Made by a program: the position numbers and the translations under genes. From the IMG/VR virus record IMGVR_UViG_3300032307_000369, positions 124,001-188,000 of that record: 64,000 nucleotides of DNA; one strand, 5' to 3'. The notes beneath the pieces were generated by a model that saw only the letters and a list, made by a program, of their open reading frames with translations, was not told where the DNA came from and did no database searches. Below, piece by piece: positions 51,925 to 58,330 of this stretch. Each line of letters starts with the position of its first letter. Position 1 is the first letter of the stretch.

Positions 51925-52815
51925 ATGATAATAACGACTGTAAAGAGAAACAAATATCTTAACAACAAAGACCTACTGTTACAGATACACAAGAGCAAGA
52001 ACACATATGGATCATTTATGGGTCCTGAATATGAGGACTATGATCTAATCCTTCCATCTGTTGATAAAATCAATGTAAGAACTATCGCAGAAGCTAAACG
52101 TAATAGAGCTAAACGGCTAGGAACTAGGTTATATCAACAAAATAAAGCTCAAGGCATTAAGGATGTCAAGCTAGTTGACTGCATAATTGACTACAAAAAG
52201 GTACCAAAAACTGATTTAGTGTTTAGGATTATGACACATGAACACGTGCCACTTGCTCCTGGACGTAAGAAAACAGTGAAAAGCACAGCTGACGCTCATG
52301 AAAGATGTAACTTTCCTCCCTATCAACATTGGGCATTTGATGCTAATGATGTACTAATGTGTGTAGGAAAAAGTCACTGGAAGGGCACTTTGCAAAACGG
52401 TACCTTTTCTAAAGAACACGGAAGAATTACTGAAGAGCTTGGCAAAATGTATCTAATGCTAGCTGAACGATATGCACAAAGAAGCAATTGGCGAGGTTAT
52501 ACTTACGTTGAAGAAATGAAAGGACAAGCAATTTTACAATTAAGTCAGATTGGTCTACAGTTTGATGAAAGTAAATCTGAAAATCCTTTTGCTTATTATA
52601 CTGCCGCCGTTACTAACAGTTTTACTCGTGTGCTTAATATTGAAAAGCGTATGCAAAATATTCGTGATGACATGTTAGAAGAAAGCGGACTAACTCCTAG
52701 CTTTACAAGACAAAACCAACAAGAATACGCAGAGGAAACTGCACGTCAAGCTGCCTTGTACAAGGGCATGAGACAAGCAAAAAGTGAAGATACTCCAGAG
52801 GAAGAAGCTGAATGA
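51925..52815 (+). CDS. late transcription sigma factor gp55-like
   Basis: YLNNKDLL, RSNWRGYTY.EEM and FDESKSENPFAYYT motifs; upstream of gp47/gp46. Confidence 0.85.
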   Translation: MIITTVKRNKYLNNKDLLLQIHKSKNTYGSFMGPEYEDYDLILPSVDKINVRTIAEAKRNRAKRLGTRLYQQNKAQGIKDVKLVDCIIDYKKVPKTDLVFRIMTHEHVPLAPGRKKTVKSTADAHERCNFPPYQHWAFDANDVLMCVGKSHWKGTLQNGTFSKEHGRITEELGKMYLMLAERYAQRSNWRGYTYVEEMKGQAILQLSQIGLQFDESKSENPFAYYTAAVTNSFTRVLNIEKRMQNIRDDMLEESGLTPSFTRQNQQEYAEETARQAALYKGMRQAKSEDTPEEEAE

Positions 52816-53834
52816 CAAATCTTTTTAAGAAAGCAGCCTGTTTTACTGATATCCATTTTGGATTGAAGAGTAATAGTCGTACACACAATGAAGATTGTGC
52901 TGATTTTGTTGATTGGTTTATTGCTACTGCTAAAGAAAAAGGTGCAGAAACTTGCATTTTCTTAGGAGATTGGCATCATAATCGCTCAACAACTGACGTT
53001 AGTACAATGAATTATACAGTAAATGCGTTAGAAAAACTTAACAGCGCATTTGACACTGTACATATTATTACAGGTAATCATGACCAGTATTATAAGGACA
53101 AAAGAGATCTACATAGTTTAGAATATGGCAGATTATTTCCAAATATTAACATGGTCAATAATGCTTTTACAGAAGGAAATGTCACTATTCTTCCTTGGCT
53201 AGTAGGCGATGAATGGAAGACTATTGAAAAGATCAAGAGCAAATACATATTTGGTCACTTTGAACTTCCGCTGTTTTATATGAACGCCATGGTGCAAATG
53301 CCTGATCATGGCGAACTACAGCCCACTCACTTCAAACATCAAGATTATGTTTTTAGTGGTCACTTTCATAAGAGACAGAGCAAGGACAAAGTTCATTACA
53401 TTGGCAATGCCTTCCCACACAACTATGCTGACAGCTGGGATGACATGAGAGGAATGATGTTATTGGAATGGGACAAGCCGCCTGAATATATTGATTGGCC
53501 TGACTGTCCTAAATATCGTTCTGTAAAATTAAGTAGACTTCTTGATGAGAAAGATAGTATAATGAAGAGTAAGATGTACTTACGTGTTACTCTTGACATT
53601 GATATTACCTTTGAAGAGGCTAATTTCATTAAGGAAACCTTTATGAAAGAGTACGACATCCGAGAATTAAGTTTGATTACGGAGAAAGATAACTTGGAAG
53701 GACTAGTTGATGAAAATACTGATGTTAAGTTTGAAAGCGTAGATCAAATCGTAGCTGAACAAATCGTTGCCTTAGAGACTGGCACATATAATAACAATAC
53801 TCTATTAAGCATTTATAACGGACTTCATGTTTAA
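52812..53834 (+). CDS. recombination nuclease gp47 (Mre11/SbcD-like)
   Basis: DIHFG, GD, GNHD, GHFE and SGHFH phosphoesterase motifs. Confidence 0.92.
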   Translation: MTNLFKKAACFTDIHFGLKSNSRTHNEDCADFVDWFIATAKEKGAETCIFLGDWHHNRSTTDVSTMNYTVNALEKLNSAFDTVHIITGNHDQYYKDKRDLHSLEYGRLFPNINMVNNAFTEGNVTILPWLVGDEWKTIEKIKSKYIFGHFELPLFYMNAMVQMPDHGELQPTHFKHQDYVFSGHFHKRQSKDKVHYIGNAFPHNYADSWDDMRGMMLLEWDKPPEYIDWPDCPKYRSVKLSRLLDEKDSIMKSKMYLRVTLDIDITFEEANFIKETFMKEYDIRELSLITEKDNLEGLVDENTDVKFESVDQIVAEQIVALETGTYNNNTLLSIYNGLHV

Positions 53835-55620
53835 ACTAAAAACAATAACAGTAAAAAACTTTATGAGTGTGGGGAACCAGACTCAAGCCGTAGATTTTGA
53901 CAAGAATCATTTGACTTTGGTGTTGGGTGAAAACGTAGACTTAGGCGGAGATGACAGCGGTAGTCGTAATGGTACTGGTAAAACAACTATCATCAATGCT
54001 TTGTGCTATGCTTTATATGGCGAAGCCTTAACTAAGATTAAAAAAGAAAATTTAATTAACAAGACAAACGGTAAAAACCTAATTGTTACTTGTGAATTTG
54101 AAATTAATGGCAGACAGTATAAGATTGAAAGAGGAAGAAGACCAAACTTCTTAAAATTTTACGTTGATCATGTTCAAATAAAAGATGATTCACAGGGCGA
54201 TGACGATGCTCAAGGAGACAGTAGAGAAACACAAAAGGCTATTGAATCTTTATTAGGCATGAGTCAAACAATGTTCAAGCATTTGGTTGCATTGAACACA
54301 TATACCGAACCGTTTCTAAGCATGCGGGCAAATGATCAACGAGAAGTCATTGAACAGTTGCTTGGTATAACCTTGTTAAGTGAGAAAGCAGAATTACTTA
54401 AAGTTCAAGTAAAAGAAATTAAAGATCAAATTCAAGCAGAAACTTTTAAAATCGACAGCATAAGGACTAGTAATGAAAAAGTACAACAATCAATTGACAG
54501 CCTCTCTACTAAAAGTAAAGCCTGGGAATCCAAGCGAGAACAAGACTGCGCCGGTTACCAATCAGCGATTGCCGAGTTGCGCTCTGTTGATATCGACGGA
54601 GAAATTGAAAAACATGCTAGACTCAAGGTGTACAACGAACTAACAGCAAAAATTAGTTCATTAAACAAGCAGAAGGCCACTCTTGAAACTGCTATTGGTC
54701 AAGCTGAAAAGACCGTTAGCAAGTATACTAGAGAGTTAGAACAACTTGATAATAAAAAATGTCCTGCTTGCGAACAAGAACTGCATGATCATAAACACGA
54801 CGAGATGAAAGACACTGCTGTAAAGCATTTGTCTGATTCAATTGCGTATCAAGACAAGGTGTTAGCTGACCTTAATCTAGTGTTAAAAGAATTGTCTGAC
54901 ATTGGCGATATCAATGGAAGACCGTCTACTTACTATGACAGTGCTGAACAAGCCTACAATCATAGAAATAACGTTGAAAGTTTGAGTAAGGCTCTTGCTG
55001 ACAAGCAAGTAGAGTTGAATCCTTACACTGAACAAGTGGACGAATTACGAAAAACAGCATTACAAGAAATCAGTTGGGACACAGTTAATGAGTTGACTAG
55101 TGTAAAAGACCATATGGAGTTCTTACACAAACTATTAACCAGCAAAGATAGTTTTATACGTAAGAAAATTATTGATCAAAATCTTGCATATCTAAACAAA
55201 CGTCTAAGTTATTACTTGAATAAGGCAGGGTTGCCACATCAAGTCAAGTTCTTAAACGATTTGAACGTTGAGATTACACAGCTAGGCCAAGACTTAGACT
55301 TTGATAACTTGAGTCGCGGTGAACGCAACCGACTTATTTTAAGTTTAAGTTGGGCGTTCCGTGATGTTTGGGAAAGTTTATATCATCCTATTAACTTATT
55401 GTTCATTGATGAACTTATTGATGCAGGCATGGATAGTGCAGGTGTTGAAGGTGCATTGGCGATTCTTAAGAAGATGGCTAGAGAAAGAGATAAAAATATC
55501 TATTTGATCAGTCACAAGGATGAACTTGCGGGTCGAGTAAACAGTATTTTACGAGTGATTAAAGAAAACGGGTTTACCAGCTACTCAACTGACACAGATG
55601 TTATTGAAGCTCCGGTATAA
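53827..55620 (+). CDS. recombination ATPase gp46 (Rad50/SbcC-like)
   Basis: NGTGKT Walker A, CPAC zinc hook, LSRGE signature, LFIDE and ISH motifs. Confidence 0.93.
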   Translation: MFKLKTITVKNFMSVGNQTQAVDFDKNHLTLVLGENVDLGGDDSGSRNGTGKTTIINALCYALYGEALTKIKKENLINKTNGKNLIVTCEFEINGRQYKIERGRRPNFLKFYVDHVQIKDDSQGDDDAQGDSRETQKAIESLLGMSQTMFKHLVALNTYTEPFLSMRANDQREVIEQLLGITLLSEKAELLKVQVKEIKDQIQAETFKIDSIRTSNEKVQQSIDSLSTKSKAWESKREQDCAGYQSAIAELRSVDIDGEIEKHARLKVYNELTAKISSLNKQKATLETAIGQAEKTVSKYTRELEQLDNKKCPACEQELHDHKHDEMKDTAVKHLSDSIAYQDKVLADLNLVLKELSDIGDINGRPSTYYDSAEQAYNHRNNVESLSKALADKQVELNPYTEQVDELRKTALQEISWDTVNELTSVKDHMEFLHKLLTSKDSFIRKKIIDQNLAYLNKRLSYYLNKAGLPHQVKFLNDLNVEITQLGQDLDFDNLSRGERNRLILSLSWAFRDVWESLYHPINLLFIDELIDAGMDSAGVEGALAILKKMARERDKNIYLISHKDELAGRVNSILRVIKENGFTSYSTDTDVIEAPV

Positions 55621-55946: not shown

Positions 55947-56141
55947 ATGACAGATACTATTAAATTAATCGAAGATTCACTAGCACAATGGAAGGCTGAA
56001 GACGAGAAATTCGTCAAAGGTAACAGCGCCGCTGGCACAAGAGCTCGCAAGGCATTGGCAGAACTAGCCAAGGCAGTAAAAATTCGCCGTAACGAAATTA
56101 CAGCAGAGAAGAACGCTCGTAAAGAAGCCAAGGCAGCTTAA
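55947..56141 (+). CDS. histone H1-like (Hc1 family) protein
   Basis: EKFVKGNSAAGTRARKALAEL motif; AAGGA SD. Confidence 0.75.
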   Translation: MTDTIKLIEDSLAQWKAEDEKFVKGNSAAGTRARKALAELAKAVKIRRNEITAEKNARKEAKAA

Positions 56142-56305
56142 TGTCAGACGTTGACGTTAAGCGATTACTTCAGCTTGAGCAAACTGTAAAAAGATTAGAG
56201 TTCCAAGTTGCACAACTAACTCAAAGAGTCAATTACTTTGAGCGTGAACGTCAACGAATTAAAACTGATATCAATCATATTGCAGGGATCCTTAGAAAGC
56301 AATGA
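56141..56305 (+). CDS. small coiled-coil protein (54 aa, absent from ORF track)
   Basis: TAATG and ATGA coupling at both ends. Reads MSDVDVKRLLQLEQTVKRLEFQVAQLTQRVNYFERERQRIKTDINHIAGILRKQ. Confidence 0.7.
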   Translation: MSDVDVKRLLQLEQTVKRLEFQVAQLTQRVNYFERERQRIKTDINHIAGILRKQ

Positions 56306-56748
56306 CATGGTTGTACGAAGGGATCACTGTTGAACAACTTCCAGAGGAGTGTGTTGGTTTTGTTTATATCATTACCAACACACTTACTGGTCGCAAATAT
56401 ATAGGCAAAAAACTAGCAAAATTTAGTCGAACTACTTACAGAGTACAAAAATTAAAAAACGGTACTAAGAAGAAAAAAAGAATTAAAAGTAAAGTAGATA
56501 GCGACTGGCAAGAATATTATGGCTCAAGTGACGAACTGAACAAAGACATAGAGACATTAGGCAAAGAAAACTTCAAACGTGAAATTCTCCACTATTGCAC
56601 GAGTAAGGCAGAAACTTCATATCTAGAAGCTAAAGAGCAATTTGAACGTAAGGTATTGGAAACTGATGAGTATTACAATGGCCACATTCAAGTTCGCGTC
56701 CACGGCTCACACATAATCAAAAAATTTAAGGCTCAATTAAACAGTTAA
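56302..56748 (+). CDS. single-domain GIY-YIG endonuclease
   Basis: GFVYIITN...RKYIGKK, YYGSS, F.REIL, E and YYN motifs. Confidence 0.88.
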   Translation: MTWLYEGITVEQLPEECVGFVYIITNTLTGRKYIGKKLAKFSRTTYRVQKLKNGTKKKKRIKSKVDSDWQEYYGSSDELNKDIETLGKENFKREILHYCTSKAETSYLEAKEQFERKVLETDEYYNGHIQVRVHGSHIIKKFKAQLNS

Positions 56749-57105
56749 TGACTCGCACAGGTTAATATCATGTGCCTAGAGACAACCCGATAATAAGGGG
56801 GACGGAAGTCTTGCCGCTGTAGCAAGCACTCAACTAGTATCCTTAACAGGACCACGATAGCAAGCATGCCTGCTGTTTAGTTGTTTGAATAGAGTCAAAA
56901 AAGGCAAAAAGAAGGGAGAAAAACCCTACGTTTGTGTGTATGTTAGCGTATGTACACAAACCGCCGTCATAATGAAGACGCAACTCGAGGTACCGGATGA
57001 CCGCCTCTGTAATGTTGTAACGCTAAGTGGTTGTGCTACTCGGATAATGTAGATCATTTCACTTCGCCCGCCAGGGCGAAGTGTGGCTGATTAATCTGGA
57101 TAATA
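56749..57105 (+). ncRNA. candidate structured non-coding RNA of unrecognised family
   Basis: ORF-free and GC-richer than its flanks; many nested stems with G-U pairs on the + strand (see findings). Confidence 0.55.
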
Positions 57106-57242
57106 TCGTAAACACTTCGTGTTTTATAATTGTTCTTATTATTAAATGAAATAAAACTGTGAGTTATGAAATAACGAACAAGTGAGCGTTAGCTCACTGA
57201 TAGAACATGCTACTGTTATCAACTTTACTACTTAAGGGTAAC

Positions 57243-57461
57243 TCAGATTAAAGGCATACCGGAATCTTTAGTCCATTCCATATTTTCTTTTACGATTTCA
57301 TTGATAGCTTGTTTTTGCTCGTAGGTCAACTGAAATGCCTCATCAGTGGTAAGGCCTCCACGCATGTACCATGCTAACCTGAATGTGTCTTTTTCGATGG
57401 CTTTTGCTTCTTTGTCGAGTCCTGCTGATATCTCAACAATTTCAGGCAGAGTTTTAGACAA
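57243..57461 (-). CDS. gp51-like small ORF; probable -1 frameshift extension of the upstream gene
   Basis: TTG start without an SD; lies in the -1 frame of the upstream gene across AAATTTTTTC. Confidence 0.65.
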   Translation of the reverse strand: MSKTLPEIVEISAGLDKEAKAIEKDTFRLAWYMRGGLTTDEAFQLTYEQKQAINEIVKENMEWTKDSGMPLI

Positions 57462-57466
57462 AAGCC

Positions 57467-58330
57467 TTAGACGAAAAAATTTGAGTAATCAAACTCAAAG
57501 GGCACTTCCATCTGTGCGGGAGCTCCTTGATCCACATACTGCTGTGGAGTCTGTATGGTCATGAAGCGTTTGTTGTTCCTATCGTTAAGTTCTCTAAATG
57601 CTTTAGCCACTACATCAAAAAACTCTTTATCACAATTTTCTAAAAACTCTTTAATTTGTAATGGGTCAGTGGTGTTGCCTTCTGTAGTGTCAATACGCTT
57701 AATTCCGTTTAACATCTGCATGAGAGTAGCATCTGCTAGACGTCCCATGGCGTTTGCTGCCATGTCAATACGCTGTTCTTCACTGAGATCTTCGTTTTGT
57801 ATAATGGCTTGTAGCACACGATTACTGTCAAAACTTAGTAGGCTATAGTCAGTTAATACCTTGTAGGTCACTGGCTCAATGTATATGGTCATATCGTTGT
57901 TGACTTTGACTTCTTCTTCCCAAAAGGTATTTTCCACAATTTGATCTAACAACGGTCTCAAGTCAATTTCAAAAGGTTCTTTTTCATTGGTGCCTGGAAT
58001 ACTCACATCCATGGTCATTTTTTCGCCGTATGTGGCAATGCGTATGGCAATTAATATTGCATCTAAATCTAAACTTGGACACTTCCAAGGATCTAAAATA
58101 TTTGGCACACAGCTTTTAATCACGTCCACAGTGGTACGTCCGTTGAACAATGCATCTGGAGTTCTGATCAACAGCTCGTCTTTAACGGTCAGTCCATATA
58201 CAGGGAACTCTCCGTTAGCTGGTATTTCTAAACTGCCTTCAGGCCAAAAGCGTCCTTGGCTGGGCAATTTAAGAAATAGTTTGGGTCTTCTCATAAAAGA
58301 AGACAGGGGATTTTTACGTGGACTTTCCAT
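57467..58330 (-). CDS. baseplate hub / tail assembly chaperone gp26-like
   Basis: LKLPSQG...TVKDEL...DLDAILIAIRIATYGE...IDL...FF end. Confidence 0.8.
   Translation of the reverse strand: MESPRKNPLSSFMRRPKLFLKLPSQGRFWPEGSLEIPANGEFPVYGLTVKDELLIRTPDALFNGRTTVDVIKSCVPNILDPWKCPSLDLDAILIAIRIATYGEKMTMDVSIPGTNEKEPFEIDLRPLLDQIVENTFWEEEVKVNNDMTIYIEPVTYKVLTDYSLLSFDSNRVLQAIIQNEDLSEEQRIDMAANAMGRLADATLMQMLNGIKRIDTTEGNTTDPLQIKEFLENCDKEFFDVVAKAFRELNDRNNKRFMTIQTPQQYVDQGAPAQMEVPFEFDYSNFFV

What the first reader, a model, noticed from the sequence alone, without database searches (positions are those of the whole stretch)
56749..57105. Candidate ~350-nt multi-domain structured RNA starting right at the GIY-YIG stop codon
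Seen: the largest ORF-free gap in the window. Domain 1 is closed by TGACTC/GAGTCA (56749-56754/56892-56897). It contains GCACA/TGTGC, CTTGC/GCAAG, and CAACTAG/TTAGTTG, which encloses TCCT/AGGA and ATAGCA/TGCTGT. Next come AGGG/CCCT, a 14-bp stem (56930-56961) with four G-U pairs favouring + strand RNA, CGTC/GACG, nested GCAAC-GAGG-CGG/CCG-CCTC-GTTGT, and a perfect 10-bp stem CACTTCGCCC/GGGCGAAGTG (57060-57083). Possible pseudoknots: ACCAC 56851 with GTGGT 57027, and GCAC 56826 with GTGC 57033. GATAAT recurs three times. I do not recognise it as tRNA, tmRNA, RNase P or an intron. Inference: a new phage ncRNA, perhaps a nuclease-associated RNA, a ribozyme or a replication primer.
Basis: partly seen in the sequence, partly recalled or inferred. 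Interest (0 to 1): 0.8.

Follow-up and report, generated by a model that had tools for sequence, protein, structure and literature searches.

The report
Large structured RNA beside phage nuclease
The gap holds a real, strongly conserved folded RNA of about 355 bases from freshwater jumbo phages: its first 140 bases are an already catalogued orphan RNA motif (Polynucleobacter-1), the larger pseudoknotted remainder is undescribed, and its function is still unknown.

Summary
The RNA is real. Window 56749-57105 (+) is conserved over its whole length in more than 90 related phage loci, while flanking proteins fall to 37% identity.

- **5' domain (56750-56886).** It matches Rfam RF01718, Polynucleobacter-1, at 85.7 bits against a gathering score of 37. 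This orphan motif was already reported in 2010 as lying downstream of this gene family.
- **3' domain (about 56909-57105).** It reaches no Rfam gathering score. On 90 distinct sequences 86.9% of cells pair against 64.8% in shuffles. 37 of 46 pairs change on both sides.
Both proposed pseudoknots and the outer closing helix fail.
- **Modularity.** The 3' domain also occurs behind a second, uncatalogued 5' domain.
- **Twin 7-mers.** GGAUAAU at 57042 and 57098 changes in concert about 20 times. No complement was found within the 1.5 kb upstream or 0.8 kb downstream.
- **Nuclease link.** The upstream gene is a Seg-type GIY-YIG nuclease with no DNA-binding domain. The RNA follows it in 67 of 73 loci, but gene order is conserved throughout, so a functional link is unproven.

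Verdict: a new variant of a known orphan RNA family, function unknown.

The parts
56302..56748 (+). Gene for a 148-aa Seg-type GIY-YIG nuclease domain with no DNA-binding domain; the RNA starts right after its stop codon
   Evidence: Pfam PF19835 SegE_GIY-YIG, E 1.4e-33. AlphaFold2 pLDDT 92.7. BFVD fold matches to Seg-like homing endonucleases, E 8e-18 to 1e-5. Y22, Y33, G35, K37, E109 and N126 are invariant in 62 homologues.
56749..57105 (+). The whole structured RNA, about 357 nt in two domains
   Evidence: Conserved end to end in distant relatives. Conservation stops after 57105.
56750..56886 (+). 5' domain, Rfam RF01718 Polynucleobacter-1. Helices P1 56755-59/56771-75, P3 56810-14/56822-26, P4 56831-37/56877-83, P5 56840-43/56848-51, P6 56857-62/56871-76
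   Evidence: cmscan 85.7 bits against gathering 37, E 8.5e-17, model positions 1-141 of 141. Pair counts.
56887..56912 (+). A-rich linker with the conserved AAGGCNAAAAAG
   Evidence: Alignments A1 and A2.
56913..56927 (+). P7 hairpin, AGGG/CCCU
   Evidence: All 4 pairs change on both sides; 73% paired.
56930..56961 (+). P8 long hairpin, 56930-41 with 56950-61; its loop forms the pseudoknot
   Evidence: All 12 pairs change on both sides; 83-92% paired.
56943..56949 (+). Pseudoknot 5' strand, UUAGCGU, in the P8 loop
   Evidence: Pairs with 57020-57026. 6 of 7 pairs change on both sides; 88% paired.
57020..57026 (+). Pseudoknot 3' strand, ACGCUAA
56964..56981 (+). P9 hairpin, (C)CGUC/GACG(G)
   Evidence: All 5 pairs change on both sides; 79% paired.
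56982..57016 (+). P10: outer AAC/GUU (56982-84 with 57014-16), inner GAGGU/GCCUC (56987-91 with 57003-07), and the near-invariant 11-nt loop ACCGGAUGACC (56992-57002)
   Evidence: Inner helix 100% paired, including a U-G pair invariant in 88 of 88. Outer helix 86% paired, all 3 pairs covary. The loop resembles the cow-rumen-2 consensus.
57042..57048 (+). Repeat R1, GGAUAAU, predicted single-stranded
   Evidence: Identical to R2 in 73 of 89 distinct sequences, with at least 11 variants. Changes in concert with R2.
57060..57083 (+). P11, a 10-bp hairpin CACUUCGCCC/GGGCGAAGUG
   Evidence: 91% paired; 5 pairs change on both sides.
57098..57104 (+). Repeat R2, GGAUAAU, at the last conserved positions of the RNA
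57111..57123 (+). Weak terminator-like hairpin AACAC-UUC-GUGUU followed by a U/A-rich tail; a possible 3' end in this phage only
   Evidence: Own scan. Found in 21 of 89 relatives against 43 of 279 control windows, so it is not a family feature.
57181..57198 (-). Terminator-like hairpin for the converging minus-strand genes

Best explanation
Shown:
- Window 56749-57105 (+) is the gene for a folded RNA of about 357 nt in a freshwater jumbo phage with a T4-type gene core. The closest cultured relative by gp46 is Pseudomonas phage PA5oct, at 49% identity.
- The 5' 140 nt are a member of Rfam family Polynucleobacter-1.
- The 3' 200 nt are an uncatalogued domain: five covarying helices, one hairpin-loop pseudoknot, an invariant 11-nt loop, and two identical 7-nt elements flanking the last hairpin.
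- The RNA lies at the end of the rightward gene block gp47-gp46-...-GIY-YIG, usually facing converging baseplate genes.
- Contigs from RNA libraries cross the nuclease stop codon into the RNA.

Inferred:
- It is a free-standing, trans-acting folded RNA made from the tail of that transcript. It is not a 5'-UTR switch, a coding region or an intron.
- The 3' domain is the functional core, because it persists when the 5' domain is exchanged for an unrelated one.
- The twin 7-mers are its contact surface. They either read two copies of one partner sequence in trans or pair with each other base-for-base in parallel.
- The neighbouring nuclease, which has no DNA-binding domain, is the best candidate protein partner, but only a candidate.

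My probabilities: real structured RNA and RF01718 member 0.95; trans-acting folded RNA rather than a cis element 0.65; works together with the nuclease about 0.25. The confidence value given for this explanation (0.55) is for the whole statement, inferred trans-acting mode included.
For: - Rfam hit at 85.7 bits against a gathering score of 37. The same hit sits at the same syntenic place in relatives whose hub protein is only 37-38% identical.
- Full-length conservation in 32 distinct loci found through the 5' motif.
- A covariance model of the 3' domain finds it in 67 of 80 loci chosen only by the protein. Of those 80, 73 have room downstream. Three more give weak hits that carry the twin repeats.
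- Covariation on 90 distinct sequences: 86.9% of cells paired against 64.8% in shuffles (0 of 500 reach it). The covariation score is 0.525, against 0.176 in shuffles and 0.05-0.12 for slid partners. 37 of 46 pairs change on both sides.
- The strand is fixed by an invariant U-G pair and by the one-strand Rfam and model hits.
- In a sample of 20 loci, 9 have the 3' domain without any RF01718 hit. Fourteen listed loci carry a different conserved 5' domain.
- The next ORF downstream is on the opposite strand in 56 of 76 loci.
- Metatranscriptome contigs span 56655-56829 and 56685-56835, across the stop codon.
- The twin 7-mers change 19 and 21 times separately but only 22 times jointly on a tree built from the rest of the domain. 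No cis complement lies within -1500 to +800 nt.
- The nuclease has intact GIY-YIG residues and no DNA-binding domain. It is more conserved than gp46: 69-73% against 56%.
Against: - No experiment and no read-level RNA data. The RNA-library evidence is a few short, low-depth contigs, and DNA carry-over cannot be excluded.
- The RNA's ends are not mapped. A terminator-like hairpin follows it in only 24% of relatives.
- Single-sequence folding energy is unremarkable, z = -1.8.
- No trans partner for the twin 7-mers was found. Their complement is not enriched in the 64-kb window.
- A U-rich stretch at 56882-56887 could pair with any variant by wobble. That explains why purines can interchange, but not why the two copies stay identical.
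- Against a tie to the nuclease: the gene order gp46, GIY-YIG, RNA, hub is the same in nearly all of the 16 loci with long flanks, apart from L113, so adjacency may be inheritance only.
- L113 and L062 have no GIY-YIG gene next to the RNA; in L113 a PD-(D/E)XK nuclease lies directly upstream.
- L178 and L160 have an extra ORF between nuclease and RNA.
- Homologues of the nuclease occur in 502 cultured-phage records. The four checked show no such RNA.
Confidence: 0.55

Rival explanations
1. The RNA is the obligatory partner of the GIY-YIG nuclease, forming a ribonucleoprotein. It supplies the nucleic-acid recognition or anchoring that this nuclease lacks for want of a DNA-binding domain. The twin identical 7-mers would read the two strands of a symmetric site or two identical sites.
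For: - Same strand, with the RNA starting 0-150 nt after the stop in most loci.
- RNA present in 67-70 of 73 loci chosen by the protein alone.
- Contigs bridge the stop codon.
- The protein is the catalytic domain only, whereas fold relatives of 170-350 aa carry extra DNA-binding modules.
- The protein has a Lys-rich beta-hairpin at residues 40-66.
- It is more conserved than gp46.
- The twin 7-mers have no complement in cis.
Against: - Synteny confounds the association.
- An unrelated PD-(D/E)XK nuclease replaces GIY-YIG upstream of the same RNA in L113.
- Extra ORFs separate the two in L178 and L160.
- Homologous nucleases of 130-150 aa occur in 502 cultured-phage records. The four checked show no such RNA.
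- No hypervariable guide-like segment and no target were found.
- A full-text search found no report of an RNA-guided GIY-YIG enzyme.
Confidence: 0.25
2. The RNA is a cis-acting 3' UTR element of the nuclease mRNA. It would act as a protective or processing structure, or as an autoregulatory binding site that limits expression of a potentially toxic nuclease.
For: - The RNA begins at the stop codon and is co-transcribed.
- From established knowledge, not tested here: T4 homing-endonuclease genes are known to be tightly controlled at the RNA level.
Against: - About 350 nt, with at least 10 covarying helices, a pseudoknot and invariant loops, is far more than a 3' stabiliser needs.
- The RNA is retained when another ORF or another nuclease lies upstream.
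- The 5' domain is exchanged while the 3' domain stays.
Confidence: 0.1
3. The nuclease genes are free-standing homing endonucleases parked next to a conserved RNA gene that holds their cleavage site. This would resemble SegB in the T4 tRNA region. The adjacency would then say something about the nuclease's mobility and nothing about what the RNA does.
For: - Two unrelated nuclease families occupy the same position upstream of the RNA.
- Extra ORFs are inserted there in some phages.
- The fold is Seg-like.
- From established knowledge: conserved structured-RNA genes are classic homing targets.
Against: - The nuclease has no DNA-binding domain.
- It is present in more than 90% of RNA-bearing loci rather than sporadically.
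- It is more conserved than a core recombination protein.
Confidence: 0.1
4. The region is not an RNA gene. It would instead be a protein-coding or DNA-level element: a small ORF, an origin, or protein-binding iterons flanking a palindrome.
For: - Small ORFs of 40-55 aa overlap the region.
- The twin 7-mers flanking a GC-rich palindrome look like iterons.
- A weak minus-strand model hit lies at 57041-57225.
Against: - Compensatory changes keep the pairing, not the codons. Indels are not in threes.
- G-U pairs and an invariant U-G pair work on one strand only.
- A curated RNA model matches at 85.7 bits.
Confidence: 0.03

Closest known systems
Polynucleobacter-1 RNA motif (Rfam RF01718; Weinberg et al. 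2010, PMC2864571)
   Same: The 5' 137 nt match the full model far above threshold. The freshwater setting matches.
   Different: - The catalogued motif is 141 nt, built from 16 representatives. It was rated a likely cis-regulator and was 'not detected in any sequenced purified phage'.
- Here it is only the first 40% of a 357-nt RNA. It sits on phage contigs of up to 355 kb, mostly at the end of a transcription unit.
- It is one of at least two interchangeable 5' domains in front of a more widespread 3' domain.
cow-rumen-2 RNA motif (Rfam RF02947)
   Same: Window 56930-57029 aligns to the whole model. Shared features are a hairpin with a UUAGC loop, GCCGNCAU, a stem capped by ACNGGAUGACC, and GUAA.
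   Different: The score is 25.6 bits against a gathering score of 66, with E 0.022 in an 800-nt search. The hit is not seen at E <= 1 in a 68-kb search of 20 relatives. This is a resemblance of one module, not membership.
Nuclease-linked scaffold or guide RNAs (HEARO/omega RNA of IscB, reRNA of TnpB)
   Same: A structured RNA of a few hundred nt lies directly beside, and in the same orientation as, a small nuclease gene. HEARO too was first catalogued as an orphan 'endonuclease-associated' motif in the same 2010 survey.
   Different: No transposon ends and no variable guide segment were found. The nuclease is GIY-YIG, not RuvC or HNH. The adjacency is confounded by synteny, and the nuclease is replaceable.
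Large ornate orphan RNAs that are often phage-borne (GOLLD, ROOL)
   Same: A large, elaborately structured, strongly covarying RNA of unknown function carried by phages.
   Different: No sequence or structure match to those Rfam families. It is much smaller. It sits next to a nuclease gene, and no tRNA gene was found in the window.
T4 stable-RNA region with seg genes (tRNA cluster, species 1 and 2 RNAs, segB); from general knowledge, not tested here
   Same: A Seg-type GIY-YIG gene lies next to genes for stable structured RNAs in a phage with a T4-type core.
   Different: No homology was shown. The RNA here is not tRNA-like, and this nuclease lacks the DNA-binding part of the Seg proteins.

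Membership tests
Rfam RF01718 Polynucleobacter-1 | Covariance-model score at or above the curated gathering score (37 bits) over the full model | tested here: met
   85.7 bits, E 8.5e-17, model positions 1-141 of 141, + strand. Relatives score 80-121 bits.
Rfam RF01718 Polynucleobacter-1 | The consensus helices are present and supported by compensatory changes | tested here: met
   P1 100% paired and P3 96% paired, with 4-5 covarying pairs each. P4 and P6 covary. P5 is invariant.
Rfam RF01718 Polynucleobacter-1 | Location downstream of the GOS11034 / PSSM2_218-like gene family (Weinberg 2010, Additional file 1) | tested here: inconclusive
   The RNA lies downstream of a GIY-YIG gene whose homologues occur in 22 Prochlorococcus-phage and 339 Synechococcus-phage records. 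I did not check that PSSM2_218 itself is that homologue.
Rfam RF02947 cow-rumen-2 | Score at or above the gathering score (66 bits) | tested here: not met
   25.6 bits, E 0.022.
Group I / group II intron with an embedded homing-endonuclease ORF | Match to the intron models, an intron 5' part upstream of the ORF, and flanking exons of a host gene | tested here: not met
   No intron family at E <= 10. The ORF is preceded by overlapping small genes here and directly by gp46 in L009. The gene downstream converges.
tRNA / tmRNA / RNase P RNA | ARAGORN or Rfam detection | tested here: not met
   No tRNA or tmRNA in the window. No such Rfam hit.
Guide or scaffold RNA of an RNA-guided nuclease (omega RNA / reRNA type) | Constant linkage to the nuclease gene across different genomic contexts | tested here: inconclusive
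   Linked in 67-70 of 73 loci, but all contexts are syntenic. The nuclease is replaced or separated from the RNA in some loci.
Guide or scaffold RNA of an RNA-guided nuclease (omega RNA / reRNA type) | A hypervariable unpaired guide segment matching a target | tested here: not met
   The only variable unpaired pieces are about 10 nt before P11 and the tail after R2. The twin 7-mers have no complement nearby and none enriched in the window.
Guide or scaffold RNA of an RNA-guided nuclease (omega RNA / reRNA type) | Physical binding of RNA and protein, and RNA-dependent cleavage | not testable with these tools
   Needs biochemistry.
GIY-YIG nuclease superfamily, Seg type (the upstream protein) | Pfam match above threshold, conserved Tyr/Tyr/Glu/Asn core, and the GIY-YIG fold | tested here: met
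   PF19835 at 116 bits against a cut-off of 25. Y22, Y33, E109 and N126 are invariant. BFVD fold matches to Seg-like enzymes. Caveat: no PDB match by sequence or by fold, with best E 0.13.
5'-UTR cis-regulatory RNA / riboswitch (the 2010 rating 'cis-reg: y') | Consistently upstream of, and on the same strand as, a regulated gene | tested here: not met
   The next ORF downstream is convergent in 56 of 76 loci, including the window.

The most novel reading that the evidence does not exclude
The RNA and the GIY-YIG nuclease, which has no DNA-binding domain, form a ribonucleoprotein. The two identical, concertedly evolving 7-nt elements would specify the substrate, for example the two strands of a symmetric site. 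This would be the first RNA-directed enzyme of the GIY-YIG class. A second, purely structural novelty is also open: the twin 7-mers may form a parallel, base-for-base homoduplex, which would explain identity covariation instead of complementary covariation.
Probability: 0.12. Interest if true: 0.9.

Novelty: new variant of a known kind. Interest (0 to 1): 0.55.

Why it matters
- **It revises a catalogued RNA.** Polynucleobacter-1 has sat in Rfam since 2010 as a 141-nt orphan, rated a likely cis-regulator of bacteria and fresh water. Here it is the front end of a modular RNA of about 355 nt in jumbo phages with a T4-type core. That changes what should be synthesised, probed and imaged.
- **It points to the functional core.** The uncatalogued 3' domain is more widespread than the catalogued motif and is the better handle for finding function.
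- **The twin 7-mers are unusual.** They mutate together about 20 times. RNA covariation is normally complementary, not identical, so they mark a concrete, mutable site for experiments.
- **A nuclease link would be new.** If the nuclease proves to be the partner, it would open a new class of RNA-dependent nucleases.
- **An independent RNA is also worth having.** If not, the RNA joins the short list of large, ornate phage RNAs whose roles in infection are unknown.

Tried and rejected
- **DNA search of cultured phages** with window 56200-57500: no match. No cultured phage examined carries the RNA (Melnitz, S-SRM01, phiN3, P-RSM4, PA5oct).
- **Folding energy against shuffles**: z = -1.8 and -1.6 on the two strands, not discriminating.
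rejected by pair counts.
- **RNAalifold on the raw MAFFT alignment of full-length RNAs**: found only part of the structure, because the variable hairpins were misaligned. Replaced by a hand-set structure and a covariance model.
- **Complement of the twin 7-mers**: none within -1500 to +800 nt in 73 loci. No enrichment in the window. No inverted-repeat target. No complementary partner by mutual information over the full RNA and flanks. The one consistent candidate, UUGUUU at 56882-87, pairs equally well with shuffled variants.
- **R1-R2 antiparallel pairing**: worked through by hand. It does not explain the changes at 57046/57102 and 57048/57104.
- **Metagenome pattern scan for relatives of the cow-rumen-2-like module**: nearly all 120 hits were chance. 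Only 2 of the first 100 loci were family members. The pattern was too weak for that collection.
- **Terminator after the RNA**: only slightly enriched.
- **PDB searches with the nuclease**: no hit by sequence or by fold.
- **Literature**: no paper beyond the 2010 survey mentions Polynucleobacter-1. No report of an RNA-guided GIY-YIG enzyme.
- **Minus-strand model hit at 57041-57225** (28.8 bits): not checked; I attribute it to the palindromic P11 stem.
Full report
**What is there**

Window 56749-57242 is the largest stretch of the window without an ORF of at least 60 aa. To its left lies a rightward gene block:
- gp47- and gp46-like SbcD/SbcC (52812-55620);
- small ORFs, including an Hc1 histone-like protein;
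- a 148-aa protein (56302-56748) matching Pfam PF19835, SegE_GIY-YIG, at E 1.4e-33.

To its right two minus-strand genes converge on it: a 72-aa ORF and a gp26-type baseplate hub gene. The window is 100% identical, over the hub-gene locus retrieved, to a 245-kb IMG/VR contig. By gp46 the closest cultured phage is the Pseudomonas jumbo phage PA5oct, at 49% identity. DNA and RNA runs that hold the sequence are mostly labelled freshwater, lake or river.

**A known family covers the first domain**

Rfam's covariance models place 56750-56886 (+) in RF01718, Polynucleobacter-1. The score is 85.7 bits against a gathering score of 37, covering the full model. This was the only family above threshold in the 64 kb.

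A permissive scan of the gap adds one sub-threshold alignment of 56930-57029 to cow-rumen-2, at 25.6 bits against 66, E 0.022. There is no tRNA or tmRNA, and no intron or RNase P model hit.

The only paper in the library that names the motif is the 2010 survey.
- It lists the motif as a probable RNA and a possible cis-regulator from Burkholderiales and fresh or estuarine water.
- It says most copies lie downstream of gene family GOS11034, with possible homology to PSSM2_218 of cyanophage P-SSM2.
- It says none was found in a sequenced purified phage.

**The RNA is longer than the catalogued motif**

Relatives found through the hub protein carry the same Rfam hit at the same place, although their hub proteins are only 37-38% identical. 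Aligning the whole gap shows conservation from the nuclease stop codon to about 57105, then none.

A profile of that alignment found 32 distinct full-length copies, 49-97% identical, among loci fished with a short 5'-domain pattern.

**Structure of the 3' domain**

I set helices P7-P11 on the window sequence and built a covariance model of 199 positions and 39 pairs. I then aligned 93 matches to it. On 90 distinct rows:

| Measure | Observed | Control |
|---|---|---|
| Cells forming a standard pair | 86.9% | 64.8% in shuffles (0 of 500 reach it) |
| Covariation score | 0.525 | 0.176 shuffled; 0.05-0.12 with partners slid by 1-3 columns |
| Pairs changing on both sides | 37 of 46 | 34.5 mean in shuffles (5 of 500 reach it); 16-23 when slid |

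Because the alignment was fitted to the model, these figures lean somewhat towards the structure. The pseudoknot was not part of the model. It first emerged from RNAalifold on an independent MAFFT alignment and from mutual information. UUAGCGU in the P8 loop (56943-49) pairs with ACGCUAA (57020-26), at 88% paired with 6 of 7 pairs covarying.

The helix GAGGU/GCCUC is paired in every sequence. It includes a U-G pair invariant in 88 of 88, which would be an A-C mismatch on the other strand. It caps a near-invariant loop, ACNGNNNNACC. This loop, with its flanks, is what resembles cow-rumen-2.

The hairpins of domain 1 are those of the Rfam consensus, and they covary. Four proposals fail or lack support.
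- The outer helix TGACTC/GAGTCA is 56-62% paired.
- The pseudoknot ACCAC/GTGGT is 34% paired.
- The pseudoknot GCAC/GTGC is 43% paired.
- The inner CGG/CCG was not counted as a pair, and some relatives (ACAGCGUAACC in clade B) cannot form it.

Minimum free energy is not distinctive, at z = -1.8 on the + strand and -1.6 on the - strand.

**Modularity**

Twenty of the loci picked by the protein alone were scanned against Rfam. All twenty have the 3' domain. Eleven have an RF01718 5' domain. Nine have nothing from Rfam even at E <= 1.

Fourteen of the loci without a recognisable RF01718 domain, including most of those nine, share a different conserved 5' domain of similar size. Within RF01718 itself there are two architectures that differ around P6. 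The 3' domain is thus the constant part.

**Twin 7-mers**

GGAUAAU occurs at 57042-48 and again at 57098-104, on either side of P11.
- In 73 of 89 distinct sequences the two copies are identical. The 7-mer itself takes at least 11 forms: GGAUAAU, AGAUAAU, GGAUGAU, AGAUGAU, GGAUGAA, AGAUGAA, AGAUGAG, GCAUAAU, AGAUAAA, AGACGAA and ACAUGAA. A second clade has other forms.
- Mutual information between matching positions is 1.14, 0.87 and 0.91, and it reflects identity, not complementarity.
- I built a tree from the rest of the domain. Position 1 changes at least 19 times in one copy and 21 in the other, but the joint state changes only 22 times. Positions 5 and 7 give 13 and 10 against 14, and 14 and 13 against 16. 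The two copies therefore change together, many times.

I found no complement within -1500 to +800 nt, no enrichment or inverted-repeat target in the window, and no complementary partner by mutual information. A U-rich stretch (56882-87) can wobble-pair with every variant, but equally with shuffled ones.

This feature remains unexplained. The readings I can offer are a common trans partner read twice, or a parallel base-for-base contact between the two strands.

**The neighbouring nuclease**

The protein family is very large.
- More than 8000 close sequences, nearly all 141-148 aa.
- 2302 clusters at 50% identity.
- 502 cultured-phage records, mostly cyanomyoviruses, where it is often mislabelled 'NAD synthetase'.

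The model is confident, with pLDDT 92.7. It has the beta-beta-alpha-beta-alpha core and an inserted Lys-rich beta-hairpin. It matches predicted structures of Seg-like GIY-YIG homing endonucleases; the longer ones carry DNA-binding modules that this protein lacks. It matches nothing in the PDB. Y22, Y33, G35, K37, E109 and N126 are invariant. Between the window and L009 or L010 it is 69-73% identical, against 56% for gp46 and 37-38% for the hub protein.

**How strong is the link?**

Evidence for a link:
- 80 viral loci were chosen only by similarity to the protein (68-97% identity), and 73 have room downstream. Of those, 67 have the 3' domain on the same strand. Three more give weak hits that carry the twin repeats.
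- Among the 34 distinct hits found through the RNA, 30 have the nuclease gene upstream; one of the other four is cut off by its contig end.

Evidence that adjacency is not proof of partnership:
- Nearly all 16 loci with long flanks show the same order: gp46, nuclease, RNA, then the 72-aa ORF and hub gene on the other strand. L113 has a different nuclease, and in a few loci gp46 or the hub gene fell outside the flank or below the threshold. Inheritance alone could explain the adjacency.
- L113 and L062 have no GIY-YIG gene next to the RNA. In L113 the gene directly upstream is a PD-(D/E)XK nuclease, PF24608, E 9.7e-28.
- In L178 and L160 an ORF of 275 or 356 aa lies between nuclease and RNA.
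- More distant homologues in cultured phages (Melnitz, S-SRM01, phiN3, P-RSM4) sit elsewhere in the genome with no such RNA.
- PA5oct has the PD-(D/E)XK gene in this region, but neither the RNA nor the GIY-YIG gene.

**Expression**

Four metatranscriptome runs hold parts of the stretch. Two contigs (56655-56829 at depth 16, and 56685-56835) cross the stop codon into the RNA with 3 mismatches each. Coverage lies between 56043 and 57024, with none over the converging late genes.

The depth is low, contigs have no strand, and DNA carry-over cannot be ruled out. The next ORF downstream is convergent in 56 of 76 loci, which argues against a 5'-UTR role. A terminator-like hairpin follows the RNA here (57111-23), but in only 24% of relatives against 15% of control windows.

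**Conclusion**

The finding is a genuine, strongly supported structured RNA. The tools show four things the 2010 description did not have:
- its phage origin and fixed place in the genome;
- the identity of the neighbouring gene;
- the 200-nt pseudoknotted 3' domain, and its independence from the catalogued 5' motif;
- the concertedly evolving twin 7-mers.

Function is not shown. I rate a free-standing, trans-acting folded RNA as most likely (about 0.65 against cis-acting). Partnership with the nuclease is the most interesting but unproven option (about 0.25).

Noticed in passing
window 57467-57479 (- strand), with ORFs 57467-58330 (-) and 57243-57461 (-): The baseplate-hub gene ends ...AAU UUU UUC GUC UAA, and the 72-aa ORF follows in the -1 frame. 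The heptamer U_UUU_UUC (57479 down to 57473) sits one codon before the stop. A -1 slip there reads straight into the 72-aa ORF. The same heptamer and geometry occur in L009 and L010, whose hub proteins are only 37-38% identical. This is probably a conserved programmed -1 frameshift giving a C-terminally extended hub protein.
   Followed up: partly
L154:1932-2092, L173:1926-2059, L184, L187, L208, L214, L219, L222, L167, L191, L180, L230, L136:3426-3581, L138:3441-3560: A second conserved 5' domain precedes the same 3' domain. It reads ...GACUCUGUG-hairpin-CCCCAUUGAGGAACGGUGAGAUACCCGGUCUGG...CAAAGGCAAUUGCUAACUUAAGGCAACAAAUGG. It has no Rfam match at E <= 1 and looks like an uncatalogued RNA module.
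   Followed up: partly
L113:8259-8777 (and L062): A PD-(D/E)XK nuclease (PF24608 PDDEXK_15, E 9.7e-28) lies directly upstream of the RNA in L113, where the other loci have the GIY-YIG gene; L062 also lacks a GIY-YIG gene there, and its upstream ORF was not examined. PA5oct carries a homologue of the PD-(D/E)XK gene in the same genome region on the other strand (L351:7520-8017).
   Followed up: partly
window 55947-56141 (+): A 64-aa protein matching the chlamydial-type histone H1-like protein Hc1 (PF07432, E 3e-13), encoded between gp46 and the nuclease gene. It is also present in L169 and L113.
   Followed up: no
window 57041-57225 (-); also L151/L152 2240-2423 (-): Weak minus-strand matches of the 3'-domain model (24-29 bits), overlapping the palindromic P11 stem and the hairpin at 57181-57198. 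I read them as an artefact of the palindrome but did not test this.
   Followed up: no
GenBank phage records hit (e.g. P-RSM4 PRSM4_212, phiN3 gp310, S-SSM7): The homologues of this GIY-YIG protein are widely annotated as 'NAD synthetase', as is PHROG 447. Pfam and fold searches give no support for that name; it looks like a propagated misannotation.
   Followed up: partly
L058:9318-9567, L137:3622-3853, L066:11939-12148: Some family members carry an extra AT-rich insert of 15-45 nt, probably an added hairpin, between the GAGGU/GCCUC helix and the 3' strand of the outer P10 helix. This shows where the fold tolerates expansion.
   Followed up: no
L010:6461-8373 (- strand of the locus): Two ORFs of 342 and 303 aa with CxxxCxxC-type cysteine motifs, radical-SAM-like by eye only, are inserted between gp46 and the nuclease gene in this relative. 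An ORF of 178 aa lies between the RNA and the 72-aa ORF.
   Followed up: no
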